Source: Trichoplax adhaerens
Lineage: Eukaryota; Animalia; Placozoa
Direction: 5' to 3'
Assembly: GCF_000150275.1 (NCBI RefSeq)
Contig: NW_002060943.1
Span: forward strand, 7,060,299 to 7,124,298
DNA: 64,000 bases
Shown here: positions 12,919 to 23,112 of the stretch, piece by piece
Layout of the letters: each line of letters starts with the position of its first letter
Numbering within the stretch: the stretch's first letter is position 1
Notes under the pieces: generated by a model
Seen by the model: only the letters and a program-made list of their open reading frames with translations
The model's database searches: none
What the model was told of the DNA's origin: nothing
Translations under genes and position numbers: made by a program

Positions 12919-13926
12919 ATGGGAGCAAAGTCGCATCTTGGAATTCTATATGGATTAAGCGCCTCATTCTTTATTTCTGTTATGTCTGCATGTGTAAAAA
13001 TGACATCGTATTATTTCTTTTTACTTGTAGCTACTCGAAGTGCTTTACAGATCGTATTACTACACCCTATAATCATTTATCAGCAAATAGACATAAGGAA
13101 AAGTTTTCGGTTACCTCAAGCTTATTTTGTGTTTGGTAGAGCGATTGCTGAAACAATATCCGTATCCTGCCAGTTTTATGCTTATCAAAATATGAATATT
13201 GGTGACGCAGCTGCAATTATCTATTCGTCTCCATTTATTACTGGTATATTGGCAGCTATTTTTTTAAAGGAAAAATTCACATTATTTAATTTATTAGCAA
13301 CAATTGTTAGTTTTGGTGGAGTTATCTTAGTGTCCAAGCCGCCATTTATATTTGGATCAGGAGAAGGTGATGGAACTCAAACCAATTTTGGAGTGGCAGG
13401 GATCGCCTTTTGTGGAGCTATCTGTACCAGTATTGCCATTCTAAACGTTAGAAAAATTGGCAATTCGGTTGATACATATGTTCTTACATATTATTTTTCT
13501 ATCGTATGTTGTATCGTACCTTTAATTATCACCGGCATTACCGGAAGTTTTGAATTGCCACCCTGTGGTAGTAGAAGATTGCTGTTACTTACCATTGGTC
13601 TATTAGGTTTCCTTGGGCATTTATCTTTCGTTAAAGCAATACAATTAGAAGAAGCCATGTTAGTCGCAGTTATTCGGACAGTTGATGTCTTGTTTGGCTA
13701 TGTTTTAGAAATAACCGTTTTTGGTACAACACCGTCTATTCTATCGATTATTGGTGCATTCTTGGTAGTATCTTCAGCTTGTGCTGTGGGATTAAATAAA
13801 GTGTACGGGATATCAAAGATCTGCAGCTGTAATCAACGCGATACTTCTAGTAACGAGAAGCAACCGCCGATGATACTCGTACATGGCTTAAGGAATGATC
13901 GTAATGGAGAGAAATGTAAATTCTAG
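12919..13926 (+). CDS. SLC35G1: SLC35G1-like EamA/DMT-family transporter, intronless, 335 aa
   Basis: About ten hydrophobic helices; EamA motifs FYAYQNMNIGDAAAIIYSSPFITGILAAIFLKEK, GVILVSKPPFIFG and KAIQLEEAMLVAVIRTVDVLFGY. Confidence 0.9.
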   Translation: MGAKSHLGILYGLSASFFISVMSACVKMTSYYFFLLVATRSALQIVLLHPIIIYQQIDIRKSFRLPQAYFVFGRAIAETISVSCQFYAYQNMNIGDAAAIIYSSPFITGILAAIFLKEKFTLFNLLATIVSFGGVILVSKPPFIFGSGEGDGTQTNFGVAGIAFCGAICTSIAILNVRKIGNSVDTYVLTYYFSIVCCIVPLIITGITGSFELPPCGSRRLLLLTIGLLGFLGHLSFVKAIQLEEAMLVAVIRTVDVLFGYVLEITVFGTTPSILSIIGAFLVVSSACAVGLNKVYGISKICSCNQRDTSSNEKQPPMILVHGLRNDRNGEKCKF

Positions 13927-15472: not shown

Positions 15473-15871
15473 TAGACTTTCTGTTAGACACGGAATGAAA
15501 TTTGGAAAGGCCATGAGGTTTCCAAGGTCGATTGTAGTATACCACCAAAATGCCCTGTATAAGGTACTGTACTACCGTACGAGTATGTGGAATAAAATTT
15601 CAAAAATTTTTTCAAAGTTGAATCTCTCTTCATAGCTACAGTACCGACTGTTGCTGCTATCTCATCGCTTTAGCATGTTCAATAATCATTTTTAGCATTG
15701 GAATGTTGGGCGTATTTTTGCCTATTTGCACTCAATTCTGTACTACTATCTGGTATGCCAGTTACGCTACTTTTAACCGATAGTATTGATTGCATACAGT
15801 AGTACCTTAGCATGGTAAAGCGGCAGCGCAATCATTCGACGTGGTTTTCACTTTACTCCTAGAGATAGCTG

Positions 15872-18800
15872 ATGGATTGCTTTCAATTAGAACTGGTACA
15901 AACCGCCCGCCAGAAAGATTATTTTACTCTTTTTGATTCCGTCGAAGATGAATTGAAAGTTTCTGCTCATATTTTACATGATTTTTATATAAAGTGGACT
16001 ACCGGCGTGCGTAATGGCCAACCCTTCGTGTCCTTGATGTTATGTAGCAATGGTTAGTTTTTCCCGTGCACACGTGTACGGTAGAACGATTATGAATGTT
16101 GTGATAGAAATAAAAAGTCGTAGGCAAAGTCAGCAAGAAATCTTGGTCGCTGACTGATAGAACGATTCTTTATGACTAGCGTTTACTGGATGCTGTGGCA
16201 CCATGGTATACGGTATAAGTTGTACATGAACTATTTTAGATGCAAATCCTAGAATCTTCATCAATCGGCGACCTACCCTGAACTTTTAGCGCCAAAAGTC
16301 GCACACTACTAATGATACCTTTTAATATAACAAGTTTCTCGCCAGTAGTAATCGTATCTAGTTAAAGGGTAATCAAAACTAAGAATGATTCTCTCTTTTC
16401 TTCGAACTAGATCCTAATCAAGTTGCAAATGCTATCAGAAAATTCTTGCCGACGCCTACTGACATTCATGTTGATACATTACTTGGCTACTCTGACAATG
16501 GCCTGGATGATATGGTTATTGCCTCTAGTGAAAAAATTCAATCTCTTCATCGAGATGATTGGAACAAATCGTTAGCATTAGTCTTCATGTATGATTGCCA
16601 TTATGCTGTGCAACATCGCCACCCGTATAATAACTTACTGCAAAAAATTGATCGTGAGCGTACACGCGTCATTGGCTTTACTAACTGTGTCTTTGAAAAT
16701 TATGACGAGGCTTTACTAAATGCCATCGCTAAAGCGATCAGTTGCGAATTTTTACTTCCTTCTTGTGCCGTAGAATTATCTAGGACGAATGATGGACCTT
16801 CAGAATTCACTATAGTTAATCAATCTTATAAGCCTAAAGCTGTCGACTTACTTAACAGTTGTATTAAGTATTTAAACTCGATTAGACGTCAAAGCTGCAA
16901 ACAAACCTGGCAAAAGGTAGATCGCTATCTTAAGATCATACAAGATTGCATGCAAGTCATGACAGATTTTGGAGAATGGGCATTCTTTCGTATCAAGAAT
17001 GTAATATTAGACGAGTTGATAAATGCCTATGATTCTGCATCTGACCAAATTCATGAAAAATGTACATCAACTATATTTGCTGTCAGTAATGAAATTAACA
17101 ATCACGATGTCGACGTGGATAACATTGATTTCAACCTGTATCCTAAAGTAGAAACACTAATCAAAATTTTAACAGCGTTAGAATTAAGTCCAGGCGTCGA
17201 ACGACTTCTTCTTTGTGCAGGAAATGCCTTCACTGTAGACGTTTTATATTATTTAATGAAGCATTTTAGGAGTCAATCTATCTTACCCTCGGTAAATATT
17301 AGTAAATTGCATGACGATGGATCTTCAATGCAGAAATGTCTCAGCCGCAACCGAGATTTGTTAATTGATTATCACTCGATGAGAACCAGTATAATCATTA
17401 TAGAACAATCTTCGCCGCTATTTCTAAATTTACCCTTATCCCACTGTATAATTTGTTTCGATGGCCTAGGACATTTTTATTCTTATCTCCAATTACGAAG
17501 TAAAGTCTCACAACGACTAGTGATCATGGTCAATCAAGATAATCTGAAATATACTCTATCCAAGTACAAGAGATGGCACATTCTCATGGATTATATGTGG
17601 AGACGTGAATATACCACCGAAATTGATACTACGAATATGTTGCAAGATTCCGCTAATGTTTCGACAATTGGATCTGCGCTTTTGCCTATTTATCGGTCAG
17701 ATAATAATATTGAATATTGACTTTTCATTTGCAACTTGCCTAGTTAAAATTGCAGATAATATACTGTAGTAAATTATGGAGAAAAATAGATTTCTTGATG
17801 ATCCCAATACTCTAAAAGGTGATGTTGACGCTTTGCTTTTTTCTAGCTTTTGTTGCTACTCAAACAATAATGATTTGAGATACCATTTTCCACTGTGGAT
17901 AGTAGAACAAGTACCCGATGGTTATAAAGCATGTTTGGAACTGCCATGTCGTCTTTCTGATAAAGCTATAATTGTAATTTAATACATGACTTACGCGATT
18001 ATAGTTAGGCAGTCTTAGTTGCTGAATGCTATCGCTAATACGTTTCACGATTTACTAATTGACTTTTTAAGGGCCCTGTGTCAGCAACACCATTTCTAGC
18101 GAAAACGTCCGCAGCGTTATTAAGCGTGCAACAGCTATTCAATCACGGTTATATCACAGAATATTTAAGTCCATATGTGAAGATTCGTAACTTAAGCCGG
18201 ACTTCATATGCCAGAGAAATGAAAAAAATAGATCTATATGAAAAGAAGGTGATTACCTGTGACATTCTATTGATGTAATTCTTTCATTGAGTTTGAATTC
18301 CACCTTGCCTTGGCTAGATTGCTGACATTATAGGCCTTTTTCCGATTATGCCTCTGGAGTTTTCATATGTGTATCCTTTAATCATGGAAGTTCAAGAAGA
18401 ATTTTTTCCGTTCCGAAAGAAATGTGATATTAGACATACTTTTGGAATTGTATCACCTGCCTTATTTCCACAGGTTGGATATACATTTTACACTTTATGA
18501 CTATTTATATCTGCGTGTGCCATTATCAGCGATGATGATTAACTGTAGATATCTAGTTTGCAGATTTCGCAATGACTACCACGCGTGGTAAAATAGTGGT
18601 GAAAGTAGCGGATTACTTTGAAAAAAAATTAGACCAAGATGCAATATCTCAAATCCACAATTTTAGCAAATTTGTCTTTGAAGAAATGATTACTTGTGCT
18701 AATTCCTCTATTTTTCAATTTGATGCCTTAAATGGGTTAAAAAAATATTTGTTAGTTCCGATTTTGAGAAGCGATAGGTAAATCATGATGGTCCTAATTG

Positions 18801-21288
18801 ATCGCGTGATAATATTGTAGACTGCATACGCTAAATCTAATGTAATTTTCTTACAGCAGGTATGACCTTGATTTTGAAGTGCTCAATTTATTTTGCAAGG
18901 AGGAACATAAACTATATGTAACACCAGCTAGCCATGATTATATCATACAGTATGAAAATGCAATGGTTGCTAGAAACTATCGTGGCCTTGATACATTAGA
19001 ATGGTTTTTTGTGTCAAACGTTTGTTCGGATATGTCGCCCTCCTCAAAATTTACTAATCCAGATGTTGCGTCGACTTATAGCGAATATTACAAGATCAAA
19101 TATGATATAGATATACAAGATGCCAATCAACCTCTATTAGAGGTGGCTAGATTTAAGAAGATGCACATCACCTTGCTTAATGCAAAGCAATCCGGTAGTA
19201 TCACTCATGATATACGTACATTGTCTGTTAATTCAAATAGCAACTCTATAGTTCTTATTCCAGAGCTTTGTTTGATACACGTTATTCCAGCTGAGTTGTG
19301 GTTTCTCTCTCAATATTTGGCCTTGGTTTTGTATCGTGTCGAGTCAATACTACTTGCATTCGAGCTGAGAGAATTGCTTAGATCACAGGCTAATATTTGC
19401 GATATTTATTCTGTTGATTACTTAATAACTGCAGTAGGTTCTGCGAAGCCATGCTTATTAGAAGCGATAACACTTTCTTCTGCCCAGGATCATTTTAATC
19501 TTGAAAGATTGGAATTCTTAGGCGATAGATACCTAAATTATAAGATAACTTTGACGACCTTACTTGAGCATCCATCATGGTCAATAAATGAAGTAATCAA
19601 TAGAATGAGATTTCTAACGAAGAACAAAAAATTGTTTCGGCTAGGTGCTGGGAGACGTATTCCTTACTACATTGTAGGGTGTCCTTTCAACCAAAATAAA
19701 TCCTGGGTGCCGCCAGGTTTTGTAATAAATCAAACGGTATCTGAGTTGTCTATTGCAATGTCGAGGGAATACACACATCAACCTTTGACGAAAAAAGCTA
19801 TCGCAGACTGTGTTGAAGGATTAATTGGCTATCTTTGCTTAGTTTGTGGTAGAAATTCAGTGCTTAGATTCATGCGCTGGCTAGGCTTTGAAATCTCAGA
19901 GTGTCTTGATGGAATTCAAGAATTAATACCTTCCATCGATTTTCGAACTAATCTTTATTCTGAGACTGCAAATAGTGTCGAAACGATCCTAAACTATTCC
20001 TTTCGTAATCGGTCATTGTTGATGCTGGCACTTACCCACAAGTCTTATTCCGGGCTGGAGAGTATATCTTATGAAAAGTTAGCATTCCTTGGTGATACCC
20101 TGCTAATATATCAAATATGCCTTTTCTTATATACTCAATACACTGACTATCAACCTAAAGATTATCACCTTTTGTTGGAGTACCTAACGTGTAATCGAAT
20201 GTACGGTATTGTGGCTATTGCATCTGATTTATGCAAGTTCTTGCTTCATAAATCAAGAGAATTGACTTTGCAAATTGACGAAATTTACCAAGCTTTAGAA
20301 GCGGATGATGTACAGGTGAGACTAATGAAGCATATTTTCGTACTCTAGTATTGTTAGTGATGAAATTTAATTATAGCTTAAGGATGATGTAGTTATGGTA
20401 CTACAATAATGAATTATTAAAAATAGGCAGGAAGAAAATGCAGCTACGAATATTCTAACTTTTGCGACTTTGAAATGATTTACAGTTAATTAGGTTATAC
20501 AACGAGGTCACTAATTTTTTGATTACCGATATCATTATAGTCCTACAAACGAGTCGCAGCTGTACAATGTTAGGTTGCAGGCCTTATAATTAATTAATGG
20601 TAGTGATTGATTGATTGATTGTACAAATATTTATTTCATTTTTCAAATAAGTCGTTTTCCTCAACGGTTCAGTCAGGCTGTTCATATAAAATGAAAACAA
20701 CTCTATTACTAGAAAAGTTATCAATTGAGCAATTCGTCCCGAAAGAGCTCGGAGATACATTCGCAGCGGTTGTAGCTGCAGTATTTTTGGATAATTATCC
20801 TGATGAGGACACGGCTGGGCGTATTATTAATTCGCTATTAAATCCAATTTTCGGTAACTAGTTTTAGGGTCTATTCAGCAGTATCATTATGCTTTTGGTA
20901 ACTATAGTTATGTATTCCTAATTTTTTTTTAACAATGTTACAGATGTGAAATATACGTGTGAAGATAACCTTCCCGTATCTCTAACACAGCAGATGTATG
21001 AATCGCTTCCGAATCGAGTTCGTACCTTGTAAGTCAAGTTTTAAAATTGTTGTTTGATTGTATTTTTATAATAATTATAATTATTTATTAATTCTAAAGC
21101 TTGTTCTTGATTATAGCTTTGTTGATAATAAATCCGGAAGTTATTCAATTTGCAATGTTAGCGTCGTTCTGAAAAACTCAACGGAGAAGACGTTTGCAGG
21201 AAAGGGAAAGGATCATGAACACGCGAAAACCCTTGCGATGGCTGCATTAACGAGATATATAGATGAAAACCCTAACCAATTTCAGTGA
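15872..21288 (+). CDS. DICER1: Divergent Dicer: degenerate helicase-DUF283-platform/PAZ-RNase IIIa-RNase IIIb-dsRBD (exons ~15872-16052, 16411-17695, 17847-17973, 18072-18248, 18318-18473, 18557-18777, ~18857-20315, unresolved small exon(s), 20713-20853, 20944-21028, 21117-21288)
   Basis: FQLEL and DCHYA..HPY helicase remnants; DUF283 (YKACLELP...AKTSAALLSVQQLFNHGYI); PAZ (SPSSKF...TYSEYYKIKY...NQPLL...LIPELC); RNase IIIa ERLEFLGD/IADCVEGLIG; RNase IIIb LNYSFRNRSLLMLALTHKSY...FLGD and VPKELGDTF; dsRBD (FAGKGKDHEHAKTLAMAAL). The symbol denotes the family; orthology is not established. Confidence 0.95.
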
Positions 21289-21999
21289 TTCGGAAGTGAT
21301 TGACAACAATCTTACAATTATGGTATTGATTAAAGGTAACTATTTTTGGACATGCTTGTGGGCTATTGACAACGTACAAACGCGAGAAGTAGCATTAAGT
21401 AAATTTCATTGAATACGTATAATTGATAATTGTACGACACACATTTCATATCGTCGTTAGATTGTTCGGTTAAGACGAATTCTTGAAAAAATACCTACGT
21501 CAGTGGCTGTATATCGTAGGCATTTACTATAATTAAATAGAAAGCTTTAAAAGTGAATTATTAATAATTATAATAGATTAGTCGAAAAGTGAGGACAGGT
21601 ATAAATAATTTCATAGTAAATGCAATGCTTCCCTCTGAATCATATTGCAAAATATGTTAAATTGAAATATTACGATATGGACTTAAGTTTGTTACAAATC
21701 AAGTACTGGATCCATAGCATTTTACGCTATTCTAGAATATATATGGGGAGATCAGAACGTGTAATAATTTAATGGCATTAATTTATCGACAAGGATATGA
21801 TTAAATAAGATTAGATTAATTCATTAAGGAATTAATTTTCCTTAAAACCAAAGCAAGCGCTTTAAATTACCTACTAAACAGCTGCCAATGTGTCGTAAGG
21901 TGTTGGTATCAACTTCGCAATGTAAAAATTAATTAATAAAGAATATCTTGATTGGTTATATTTAAGACCCGAAGAGTACGTGTATTGTTAGCGATGTTA

Positions 22000-23112
22000 T
22001 CAATACTTTGTATCTTCTAGTATTGATATCATTTTTAGCCACAATTCCTTATTCTTGTACAAGCTGCAGTCACTCAGACGTTCAAAATAATAATTAAATA
22101 TGTCAAAATTGCATGTAGTAATAATATTAGATCCGATGGTAGGAACAGAAAGCTTATTTAATACGGTAACAAGAATAGCCCATTCGTCATCAGTGATGCC
22201 GAAGGACGAACGAGCCTCCAAAAATTGCTTTTTAAGCATGCTTGCTTCATCCACCCTACCAAGGCATTCATTCGTAGCTAGGTTGTCTAGAAATTCTCGA
22301 ATGTCCCTAAATACTGTAGTAATGCGACAGTTTTGGAACAATTATTTATACAATAGCTTCATATCGATTATTTAGTAAAAACCGGTCAATCTCTAAGTGA
22401 ATTTATCAATATTGCTACCATTGAGAATAACCATCCAATACATACGTAGAGTATAATTGCAATAACAAGATTAATATGTCAGTATAACGGAATATCTGTA
22501 ATGCAAATCGATACATAATAATTACTATATAAAATCTAGTCGGCTGTAGGTCTTCTATGCTACTAGAGAAGTTTATCCTATGCTGTAGATAGTAAGTAAA
22601 ATGTATGATAAGCTTTGCATTTTGTCAAGATAGATCACGTAAAGTACCCCTGCAACATTTAATGTACCGCAAGTGTTAACACATTAACAATATTAAGAAT
22701 CATATCGGTTGAGACTTAAAATTGTAGACTAAGCTATGATTGATTAAATTTATCATCACTACGAAGCGTGAGAGCATATATAAGAGAGTGTATTCTATAA
22801 TGATTGCATCACATTGCTGAAATGAACTATAAAACAATATCAAATTTCTATAAGGTTTTGTATTACCTCTTAAGTTGTAAGAAACTTTCCGGACCAAAAT
22901 ATTCGATATACGATAAACATAACCGGCTACATAATTTATAAAGTCTTGTTCAGCAAAATGGCACTGAAGCTTTTCAGTAGGAGAGAGCTCAAACCAGGCG
23001 GCATTTAGACGTGACATCCTCATGGAGAAAATTAACCGTCAATCAATATTTCACTGGCGTTCCTTGAATCAGCTATCAATGCAATAAAAAGAAGTAGCAC
23101 TTTTAACAACAT
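22000..23112 (-). CDS. Probable multi-exon orphan gene encoding a secreted protein; internal exons uncertain
   Basis: ATG at 23112 gives MLLKVLLLFIALIADSRNASEILID with a phase-1 donor at 23036; a compatible 60-nt exon lies at 22926-22867; terminal 113-codon ORF 22341-22000. No family recognised. Confidence 0.45.

What the first reader, a model, noticed from the sequence alone, without database searches (positions are those of the whole stretch)
19503..20765. A 'half-dead' Dicer: RNase IIIa intact, both RNase IIIb catalytic glutamates replaced by Ala (predicted dsRNA nickase)
Seen: RNase IIIa keeps all four acidic residues (ERLEFLGD 19503-19526; IADCVE with D at 19806, E at 19815). RNase IIIb reads EKLAFLGD (GCA at 20082-20084) and LGDTFAA (GCA at 20763-20765). 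Established: the equivalent human DICER1 motifs are QRLEFLGD (E1705/D1709) and GDIFES (D1810/E1813); loss of E1705 or E1813 abolishes 5p-arm cleavage and spares the IIIa cut of the 3p arm. Inference: two separate E>A changes in different exons, in an otherwise open gene with a good PAZ and dsRBD, point to a naturally evolved Dicer that nicks one strand and would yield only 3p-type small RNAs or nicked hairpins.
Basis: partly seen in the sequence, partly recalled or inferred. Interest (0 to 1): 0.9.

Follow-up and report, generated by a model that had tools for sequence, protein, structure and literature searches.

The report
Placozoan Dicer with dead RNase IIIb
One of the five Dicer genes of the simple animal Trichoplax has lost the key metal-binding residues of its second RNA-cutting centre but keeps the first, is expressed and is under selection, so it probably cuts only one strand of double-stranded RNA, which no experiment has yet tested.

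Summary
Window 19503-20765 lies in a multi-exon Dicer gene of Trichoplax adhaerens (TRIADDRAFT_52064, probably 'Dicer E').

- **Motifs.** RNase IIIa reads ERLEFLGD and IADCVE. RNase IIIb reads EKLAFLGD and GDTFAA. The Ala positions align with human E1705 and E1813.
- **Sequence is real.** Spliced RNA contigs and the independent Trichoplax sp. H2 assembly show the same residues.
- **Orthologue.** A syntenic orthologue (63% identity) from an unnamed run also keeps IIIa intact. Its IIIb reads EKLRFLGD and GELFMA, so the same positions are lost to different residues.
- **Selection.** dN/dS is about 0.07-0.2 in every exon, IIIb included. This is not a pseudogene.
- **Rarity.** No other well-aligned Dicer among about 150 cluster representatives lacks these glutamates.
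- **Fold.** The AlphaFold model matches mammalian Dicer in the dicing state (TM 0.74).
- **Helicase.** The ATPase motifs are also degenerate.

IIIb is therefore a conserved pseudo-nuclease domain. Single-strand cutting by IIIa is a reasonable inference, not a shown fact.

Precedents exist: Paramecium Dcl1, trypanosome KREN/KREPB pairs and DICER1 hotspot mutants.

A second Trichoplax Dicer (3.894 Mb) is the mirror image, with IIIa dead and IIIb intact. The scan had noted it on other DNA, and I re-derived it here.

The parts
15872..16051 (+). First mapped coding exon (ATG at 15872). It is helicase-like, but the Walker A position reads DSVEDE instead of GxGKT.
   Evidence: tblastn of the H2 model P0162; RNA joint 16052-16409 in run X4; sequence of P0162
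16410..17708 (+). Large exon of the helicase / partner-binding region. YDCH stands in place of DECH, and no Pfam helicase family is detected.
   Evidence: (only a weak Dicer_PBD hit); RNA contig 16410-16944
17848..17973 (+). Small exon. Its donor is joined to 18072 in RNA.
18072..18473 (+). Dicer dimerisation (DUF283) region. It holds two exons with a short intron whose limits were not fixed here.
   Evidence: Pfam Dicer_dimer; tblastn
18557..18775 (+). Platform-domain exon
   Evidence: Pfam Dicer_platform, weak; tblastn; conserved in orthologue locus L001
18849..20315 (+). Large exon holding PAZ (about 18999-19304), RNase IIIa (about 19503-19850) and the N-terminal half of RNase IIIb (about 20010-20252)
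   Evidence: Pfam; donor at 20316 confirmed by spliced RNA contigs
19503..19526 (+). RNase IIIa signature ERLEFLGD, all acidic residues intact
   Evidence: invariant columns E285, E288, D292 in alignment A2
19806..19817 (+). RNase IIIa second catalytic pair D..E in IADCVE, intact
20073..20096 (+). RNase IIIb signature EKLAFLGD. Ala (GCA 20082-84) replaces the Glu equivalent to human E1705; Gly and Asp are kept.
   Evidence: the orthologue reads EKLRFLGD
20652..20853 (+). Exon with the C-terminal half of RNase IIIb
   Evidence: Spliced RNA contigs of X7 and X10; orthologous exon P0160 in L013
20751..20768 (+). GDTFAA. The Asp is kept (20754-56). Ala (GCA 20763-65) replaces the Glu equivalent to human E1813.
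   Evidence: the orthologue reads GELFMA
20944..21028 (+). Linker exon between RNase IIIb and the dsRBD
   Evidence: RNA joint 20854-20943; orthologue dN/dS 0.10
21117..21288 (+). Last exon: dsRBD and the TGA stop
   Evidence: AF2 strands and helix at residues 648-701; orthologue dN/dS 0.07

Best explanation
This is the placozoan Dicer paralogue TRIADDRAFT_52063+52064, probably 'Dicer E'.

Its RNase IIIb domain has become a non-catalytic pseudo-nuclease. It has lost the two glutamates that bridge the two Mg2+ ions. It is still kept as the folded partner of RNase IIIa inside the usual intramolecular RNase III pseudo-dimer.

The PAZ/platform module would anchor a dsRNA end, and the dsRBD and IIIb would hold the duplex. 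Only IIIa could hydrolyse, so the strand whose 3' end sits in PAZ would be cut and the opposite strand left intact. The helicase module has lost its ATPase motifs, so the action would not depend on ATP.

Shown here:
- the residue replacements and their positional equivalence to the human catalytic residues;
- expression and splicing;
- purifying selection on every domain;
- loss of the same positions in a deeply diverged syntenic orthologue while IIIa stays intact;
- a Dicer-like predicted fold.

Inferred:
- that IIIb is inactive (very likely);
- that IIIa is active, and so that the enzyme nicks (moderately likely);
- the substrate and the biological role (unknown).
For: - **Motifs and reading frame:**
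- **Domains:**
- **Equivalence to human E1705 and E1813:**
- **Rarity among Dicers:**
- **Orthologue** (Logan contigs L001, L013, L014; 63% identity; downstream gene syntenic): IIIa reads ERLEFLGD and IADCVE, while IIIb reads EKLRFLGD and GELFMA. The four IIIb catalytic positions read A/D/D/A in Trichoplax and R/D/E/M in the orthologue, while the flanking residues are identical.
- **dN/dS (Nei-Gojobori):** 0.18 for the large exon (IIIa 0.19, IIIb N-half 0.10), then 0.20, 0.10 and 0.07 for the three 3' exons.
- **Conserved positions:** Both orthologues keep the IIIa catalytic residues plus N325 and K382. In IIIb, Trichoplax keeps 25 of 38 conserved positions, and both orthologues keep the signature Gly and N515.
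- **Expression:** spliced RNA contigs in two declared RNA runs, with no change at either Ala codon.
- **Structure:** AF2 pLDDT 85, pTM 0.86. The best structural matches are mammalian Dicer in the dicing state, TM 0.74.
- **Established knowledge:** IIIb hotspot mutations in DICER1 stop cleavage of the 5' arm only (PMC6695490). Artificial RNase III heterodimers with one dead subunit nick one strand, and KREPB4 is a natural pseudo-RNase III partner whose signature glycine is essential (PMC5648035).
Against: - No biochemical or small-RNA data exist for this protein.
- IIIa differs from other Dicers at several otherwise conserved non-catalytic positions: the Lys after GDSFL is Asn, and the HEG motif is lost. 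Its activity is therefore not guaranteed.
- Only two placozoan lineages could be compared, and dS is saturated (1.0-2.3), so the dN/dS values are rough.
- Retention of five IIIa residues in two sequences that are 69% identical in that domain is only modest statistical evidence.
- Trichoplax has no known hairpin-derived small RNA class that would need such an enzyme.
- The runs with spliced contigs are labelled metatranscriptomic, and contigs cannot give expression level.
Confidence: 0.55

Rival explanations
1. Non-cleaving dsRNA binder or scaffold. Neither centre is used for catalysis, and the protein acts as a sensor, a sequestering factor or a regulator of the other Dicers, much as a pseudoenzyme does.
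For: - The helicase ATPase motifs and the IIIb catalytic site are both degenerate.
- IIIa has lost several Dicer-conserved non-catalytic residues.
- The dsRBD is the most constrained part, with dN/dS 0.07.
- Paramecium Dcl1, with a mutated second RNase III domain, is regarded as catalytically inactive (PMC5871716).
Against: Both diverged orthologues keep every IIIa catalytic residue plus N325 and K382, while the IIIb catalytic positions drifted to different residues. That asymmetry is what continued use of IIIa would produce.
Confidence: 0.2
2. Half of a two-enzyme dicing system. Dicer E makes the IIIa-type cut and a second nuclease makes the other cut, so that duplex small RNAs still arise. 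The most attractive partner is the mirror-image paralogue at 3.894 Mb (IIIa dead, IIIb intact).
For: - The paralogue at G000:C1414:3.894 Mb reads NFNKIKYIGK and IAECISA in IIIa, and EKLEFVGD and ADVFES in IIIb.
- An earlier scan note says that this gene keeps a full ATPase helicase and lacks the dsRBD. Those are exactly the modules that are dead or present in Dicer E (not tested here).
- Cooperation of two Dicer-like enzymes on one product is documented in Paramecium (PMC5871716).
Against: - There is no evidence of interaction or co-expression.
- The sister grouping of the two paralogues (SH-aLRT 97) dissolves when either one is left out, so it may be long-branch attraction.
- Two other Trichoplax Dicers have all eight catalytic residues, so dicing does not need such a pair.
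Confidence: 0.15
3. RNase IIIb is still active, using other acidic residues or a single metal ion, so the protein is an ordinary dicing enzyme with an unusual active site.
For: Both Asp positions are kept in Trichoplax, and a Glu stands three residues before the lost one (EKLAFLGD).
Against: - The orthologue puts Arg and Met at the two Glu positions and Glu at one Asp position. That pattern is hard to reconcile with a conserved alternative metal site.
- The equivalent single changes in human DICER1 stop 5'-arm cleavage (PMC6695490).
Confidence: 0.05
4. A decaying gene copy or an assembly error.
For: The annotated model is split in two (TRIADDRAFT_52063 and 52064), and several enzymatic motifs are lost.
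Against: - All exons have open frames in two lineages, with conserved intron positions and stop codon.
- dN/dS is 0.07-0.2.
- RNA contigs are spliced.
- The independent H2 assembly has the same residues.
Confidence: 0.03

Closest known systems
Human DICER1 RNase IIIb hotspot mutants (E1705, D1709, D1810, E1813)
   Same: The same two glutamate positions are lost while IIIa is intact. These mutants fail to cut the 5' arm of pre-miRNAs and keep the 3'-arm cut (PMC6695490; alignment).
   Different: Those are somatic, tumour-associated single substitutions in an otherwise canonical enzyme. Here both positions are replaced in a germline gene that is kept under purifying selection, in an animal reported to lack miRNAs.
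Paramecium Dcl1 (ohnologue of Dcl2)
   Same: [quoted passage not shown]
   Different: It is a ciliate Dicer-like protein of independent origin and is regarded as inactive. No conservation or selection analysis comparable to the one here was seen in that paper.
Trypanosome editing endonucleases KREN1-3 with KREPB4-8 partners
   Same: One catalytic and one degenerate RNase III domain pair up so that only one strand of a duplex is cut. The degenerate domain keeps the signature glycine (PMC5648035, PMC9508840).
   Different: There the two domains sit on separate proteins in a large complex. Here they are the two domains of one Dicer polypeptide.
Other invertebrate Dicers with altered catalytic residues (Hydra Dicer C, flatworm Dicers; Gao et al. 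2014)
   Same: Loss of RNase III catalytic residues in Dicer paralogues of early-branching or parasitic animals. The same paper lists Trichoplax 'TadhE' (707 aa) in its data set (PMC3991619).
   Different: The text of that paper does not mention the Trichoplax E changes. No orthologue comparison or expression evidence was given there.
Trichoplax Dicer at 3.894 Mb (probably 'Dicer B')
   Same: Same genome, same family, also half-dead.
   Different: It is the mirror image: the IIIa tetrad is replaced (K, K, E, S) and IIIb is intact.

Membership tests
Eukaryotic Dicer (class 3 RNase III) | Two tandem RNase III domains in one polypeptide | tested here: met
   Pfam PF00636 matches two stretches, plus PF14622. 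AF2 gives two helical RNase III folds, and Foldseek's top hits are Dicers.
Eukaryotic Dicer (class 3 RNase III) | PAZ domain with platform and connector | tested here: met
   PF02170 E = 2.4e-14; PF20931 platform weak. phmmer aligns it to the human platform-PAZ cassette 4ngb.
Eukaryotic Dicer (class 3 RNase III) | Dicer dimerisation domain (DUF283) | tested here: met
   PF03368 E = 6.5e-8 on the H2 model P0162.
Eukaryotic Dicer (class 3 RNase III) | N-terminal helicase with ATPase motifs | tested here: not met
   No Pfam helicase family hit, only a weak partner-binding-domain hit. The Walker A position reads DSVEDE, and DECH reads YDCH. This feature is not universal in Dicers.
Eukaryotic Dicer (class 3 RNase III) | C-terminal dsRBD | tested here: met
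   AF2 gives alpha-beta-beta-beta-alpha at residues 636-701. HMMER aligns it to the human Dicer dsRBD. Pfam dsrm was not reported.
Eukaryotic Dicer (class 3 RNase III) | Complete catalytic tetrad (E, D, D, E) in RNase IIIa | tested here: met
   E288, D292, D386, E389 of P0001.
Eukaryotic Dicer (class 3 RNase III) | Complete catalytic tetrad in RNase IIIb | tested here: not met
   A478, D482, D590, A593. The orthologue reads R, D, E, M.
Eukaryotic Dicer (class 3 RNase III) | Measured cleavage of dsRNA into about 21-25 nt duplexes | not testable with these tools
   Needs biochemistry.
RNase III enzyme / pseudo-enzyme pair (KREN-KREPB type logic) | One domain with the full catalytic set paired with one that lacks it | tested here: met
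   The AF2 model places both domains as in Dicer in the dicing state.
RNase III enzyme / pseudo-enzyme pair (KREN-KREPB type logic) | The degenerate domain keeps the signature glycine needed for dimerisation | tested here: met
   G481 in AFLGD and RFLGD is kept in both lineages. The role of that glycine is taken from PMC5648035.
RNase III enzyme / pseudo-enzyme pair (KREN-KREPB type logic) | Cleavage of one strand only | not testable with these tools
   Needs biochemistry.

The most novel reading that the evidence does not exclude
Placozoans have split the two cuts of dicing between two specialised Dicer paralogues. Dicer E has a dead helicase, a live IIIa, a dead IIIb and a dsRBD. The 3.894 Mb Dicer has a live IIIb and a dead IIIa, and an earlier scan note reports a live helicase and no dsRBD. 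Each would be a strand-specific dsRNA nickase, and they would act together or in sequence on one substrate. That would be a natural case of complementary degeneration of the two active centres of one enzyme family.
Probability: 0.12. Interest if true: 0.85.

Novelty: new member of a known kind. Interest (0 to 1): 0.55.

Why it matters
Dicer's two nuclease centres are almost never separated in nature. What is known about a one-centre Dicer comes mainly from engineered mutants and tumour mutations.

Here a one-centre Dicer has been kept by selection since two placozoan lineages split. It sits in an animal with five Dicers and no recognised microRNAs. That gives a natural system for asking what a strand-specific dsRNA cut is good for.

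With its mirror-image paralogue, it also lets one ask whether the two cuts can be divided between two enzymes.

The work corrects the annotation as well. TRIADDRAFT_52063 and TRIADDRAFT_52064 are one gene of about 1,350 codons.

Tried and rejected
- **Third lineage:** A search for IIIb fragments with the N-terminal half of IIIb found nothing. A third lineage is seen only as a 127-residue PAZ fragment, P0107, whose DNA could not be fetched.
- **Other 'degenerate IIIb' Dicers:** The apparent cases in the quick alignment (P0141, P0136, P0109, P0124, P0032) are misaligned or divergent stretches, not convincing cases.
- **Sister relationship with the 3.894 Mb paralogue:** Dicer E groups with it at SH-aLRT 97. 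This is not robust. Without E, that paralogue joins another long branch. Without it, E joins the A/C placozoan clade at 94.
- **Paralogue at 6.970 Mb:** It has IADVMKA in IIIa, but its 56% identical orthologue P0004 has IADVMEA. That change is lineage-specific, or an error, and was not used as evidence.
- **Run X1:** It behaves like DNA (contigs run through introns), and its contig ends at 19993. It does not cover the Ala codons.
- **Literature:** de Jong et al. 2009 (Mol Biol Evol), which first described the five Trichoplax Dicers, is not held in the library. I cannot say whether it mentions these residues. The figures of Gao et al. 2014 are not held either.
- **First MAFFT run:** It timed out.
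- I built no joined spliced model of my own and sent none to any search. Whole-protein steps used the public models P0001 and P0162, and everything else was done exon by exon by reference. No complex prediction was run, because I do not claim a binding partner.
Full report
**1. The observation.**
The window is AT-rich eukaryotic DNA.
- ERLEFLGD is at 19503-19526.
- IADCVE has its D at 19806 and its E at 19815.
- EKLAFLGD has GCA at 20082-84.
- GDTFAA has GCA at 20763-65.

Pfam finds PAZ and two RNase III stretches in the large exon. It finds weaker Dicer partner-binding, dimerisation and platform matches in upstream ORFs. phmmer against solved structures aligns the two IIIb motifs with human QRLEFLGD and GDIFES. 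The two Ala residues therefore stand at the positions of human E1705 and E1813.

**2. Which gene it is.**
An exhaustive HMMER search returns a 707-residue protein that is 100% identical (P0001). It is named TRIADDRAFT_52064 of Trichoplax adhaerens. The length matches 'TadhE / DCL-E, 707 aa' in the table of Gao et al. 2014 (PMC3991619), so this is probably the catalogued 'Dicer E'.

The same 90% cluster holds TRIADDRAFT_52063 (439 aa) and a 1,355-residue partial Dicer of Trichoplax sp. H2, P0162.

Mapping P0162 on the window gives exons from 15869 to 21288. RNA contigs join 16051 to 16410 and 17973 to 18072. The two T. adhaerens models are therefore one gene.

On P0162, Pfam finds the partner-binding domain (weak), Dicer dimerisation, platform, PAZ and two RNase III domains, but no helicase family. 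The Walker A position reads DSVEDE, and DECH reads YDCH. The helicase module is kept as a fold remnant without ATPase motifs, as another first-stage note had said.

**3. Is the sequence right, and is the gene alive?**
I laid four runs on window:15500-21400.
- Contigs of two declared RNA runs (X7, X10) skip 20316-20651, and X10 also skips 20854-20943. Both introns have GT..AG ends.
- One X10 contig runs from 19550 to 21028 across both joints. Its only differences are at 19919 and 19994.
- X4 and X7 also cover 20082-84, and X7 covers 20763-65. No difference is reported at either Ala codon.
- The H2 assembly, an independent genome, encodes the same residues.

The codons are therefore real and the transcript is spliced. 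Contigs cannot give expression level. The runs are labelled metatranscriptomic.

**4. Comparison with an orthologue.**
A 479-residue ORF from a Logan assembly (P0151; locus L001) is 63% identical to the large exon. A 94-residue ORF (P0160; loci L013, L014) matches the next exon. The three contigs are identical where they overlap.

L013 carries all remaining exons, with the same intron positions and stop codon. It also carries the same downstream neighbour gene at 77% identity. The locus is therefore syntenic and orthologous.

In this orthologue IIIa reads ERLEFLGD and IADCVE. IIIb reads EKLRFLGD and GELFMA. The four IIIb catalytic positions thus read A, D, D, A in Trichoplax and R, D, E, M in the orthologue, while the residues around them are identical (LLLEKLSIEQFVPKELG..F.AV).

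Nei-Gojobori dN/dS by region:

| Region | dN/dS |
|---|---|
| Large exon, whole | 0.18 |
| PAZ | 0.21 |
| RNase IIIa | 0.19 |
| RNase IIIb, N-terminal half | 0.10 |
| 3' exon 20652-20853 | 0.20 |
| 3' exon 20944-21028 | 0.10 |
| 3' exon 21117-21288 | 0.07 |

dS is saturated, so these values are rough. The direction is clear, though. The whole protein, dead domain included, is under purifying selection, and constraint has been lifted only at the IIIb catalytic positions.

**5. How unusual it is.**
In a quick alignment of 152 Dicer cluster representatives, the IIIa positions are essentially invariant. The two IIIb glutamates are E in 126 of 129 and 89 of 94 filled rows. The other apparent exceptions are alignment artefacts.

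In the better alignment A2 (43 sequences), E478 of IIIb is E in all 41 other rows.

Both Dicer E orthologues keep the IIIa catalytic residues plus N325 and K382. Both differ from all other Dicers at some non-catalytic IIIa positions: the Lys after GDSFL is Asn, and the HEG motif is lost.

IIIb keeps the signature Gly and Asp, N515 and most structural positions, 25 of 38 in all.

**6. Structure.**
AlphaFold2 on P0001 with alignment A2 gives pLDDT 85 and pTM 0.86, with a C-terminal alpha-beta-beta-beta-alpha unit. Foldseek's best matches are mammalian Dicer in the dicing state (7yyn, 7zpi, 7xw2) at TM 0.74 over about 700 columns. The catalytic core architecture is therefore that of a working Dicer.

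**7. Paralogues in the same genome.**
A six-frame search of the genome with PF00636 finds five Dicer loci on the same contig, plus two other RNase III loci. Their catalytic motifs are as follows.

| Locus | RNase IIIa | RNase IIIb |
|---|---|---|
| 6.319 Mb (P0016, 685 aa, 'C') | intact | intact |
| 7.053 Mb ('D') | intact | intact |
| 6.970 Mb | IADVMKA (E to K) | intact |
| 3.894 Mb | NFNKIKYIGK and IAECISA (K, K, E, S) | EKLEFVGD and ADVFES, intact |
| 7.080 Mb (this gene) | intact | A, D, D, A |

The E to K change at 6.970 Mb is not shared by that gene's 56% identical orthologue P0004.

The 3.894 Mb gene is the mirror image of Dicer E. An earlier scan note (s1-739319) describes the same thing. 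Another note (s1-739579) says that gene has a full ATPase helicase and no dsRBD, which I did not test.

A quick IQ-TREE places it as sister to the Dicer E clade (97). The leave-one-out trees do not keep that position, so I treat the relationship as unresolved. The tree does show that the A, C and E paralogues each have an orthologue in the second lineage. The duplications therefore predate that split.

**8. Mechanism.**
In RNase III enzymes, the glutamate of the signature motif and the C-terminal glutamate, with two aspartates, hold the two Mg2+ ions. Each domain cuts one strand.
- Single changes at these IIIb positions in human DICER1 stop cleavage of the 5' arm and spare the 3' arm (PMC6695490).
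- Artificial bacterial RNase III heterodimers with one dead subunit nick one strand.
- Trypanosome editing endonucleases are natural enzyme/pseudo-enzyme RNase III pairs in which the dead partner needs its signature glycine (PMC5648035; PMC9508840).

On that basis I consider IIIb of Dicer E dead (about 0.9). I consider the protein most likely a PAZ-anchored, ATP-independent cutter of the 3'-anchored strand alone (about 0.55).

The main rivals are a non-cleaving binder and a two-enzyme system that uses another nuclease for the second strand.

Trichoplax is reported to lack Pasha and recognisable miRNAs (PMC3563456).

**9. Novelty.**
The gene is catalogued. Dicer paralogues with degenerate catalytic residues have been noted in Hydra and flatworms (PMC3991619). 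Paramecium Dcl1 has a mutated second RNase III domain (PMC5871716).

I found no text that describes the IIIb state of Trichoplax Dicer E. The paper that first described these genes is not in the library.

New here are four things: the demonstration that the state is shared by a deeply diverged orthologue, the evidence that it is under selection and expressed, the corrected gene model, and the pairing with a mirror-image paralogue. I file it as a new member of a known kind, of moderate to good interest.

I made no joined spliced model of my own for any search. Whole-protein steps used the public models P0001 and P0162.

Noticed in passing
G000:C1414:3.894 Mb (locus L010:814-2361): A mirror-image Dicer paralogue. 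The RNase IIIa tetrad is replaced (NFNKIKYIGK; IAECISA) while IIIb is intact (EKLEFVGD; ADVFES). By locus-tag order it is probably 'Dicer B' (an inference). The scan had noted it before (s1-739319).
   Followed up: partly
G000:C1414:6.970 Mb (loci L003, L005, minus strand): Another Dicer paralogue reads IADVMKA in RNase IIIa (Glu to Lys). Its 56% identical orthologue P0004 reads IADVMEA, so the change is lineage-specific or an error.
   Followed up: partly
window 15872-21288: TRIADDRAFT_52063 and TRIADDRAFT_52064 are two halves of one gene. RNA joints (16052-16409, 17974-18071) and the 1,355-residue Trichoplax sp. H2 model span both.
   Followed up: yes
window 15872-17708: The helicase-like N-terminus has no ATPase motifs (DSVEDE for GxGKT, YDCH for DECH) and no Pfam helicase hit.
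   Followed up: partly
window 20121; window 21303: The RNA contig of run X4 has C>T at 20121 (Leu to Phe in IIIb). All three RNA runs lack 3 bases at 21303, in the 3' UTR. These are probably strain differences.
   Followed up: no
window 19833-20708: One RNA-run contig (X4) runs unspliced through intron 20316-20651. This is intron retention, pre-mRNA or DNA carry-over.
   Followed up: no
window 21991-23023 (minus strand): The downstream neighbour gene, with exons at about 21991-22347 and 22865-23023, is conserved at 77% identity and syntenic in the orthologous contig L013.
   Followed up: partly
window 12919-13926: An upstream single-exon ORF of 335 codons is an EamA-like transporter (Pfam E = 1.5e-25).
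   Followed up: no
G000:C1409:3.647 Mb (L012) and G000:C1413:3.498 Mb (L007): Two further RNase III loci. L012 reads QILEMIGD and LANYTEA. L007 reads ETLEYLGD and QRLEFLGD, with stops between the exons. Their identity was not worked out.
   Followed up: no
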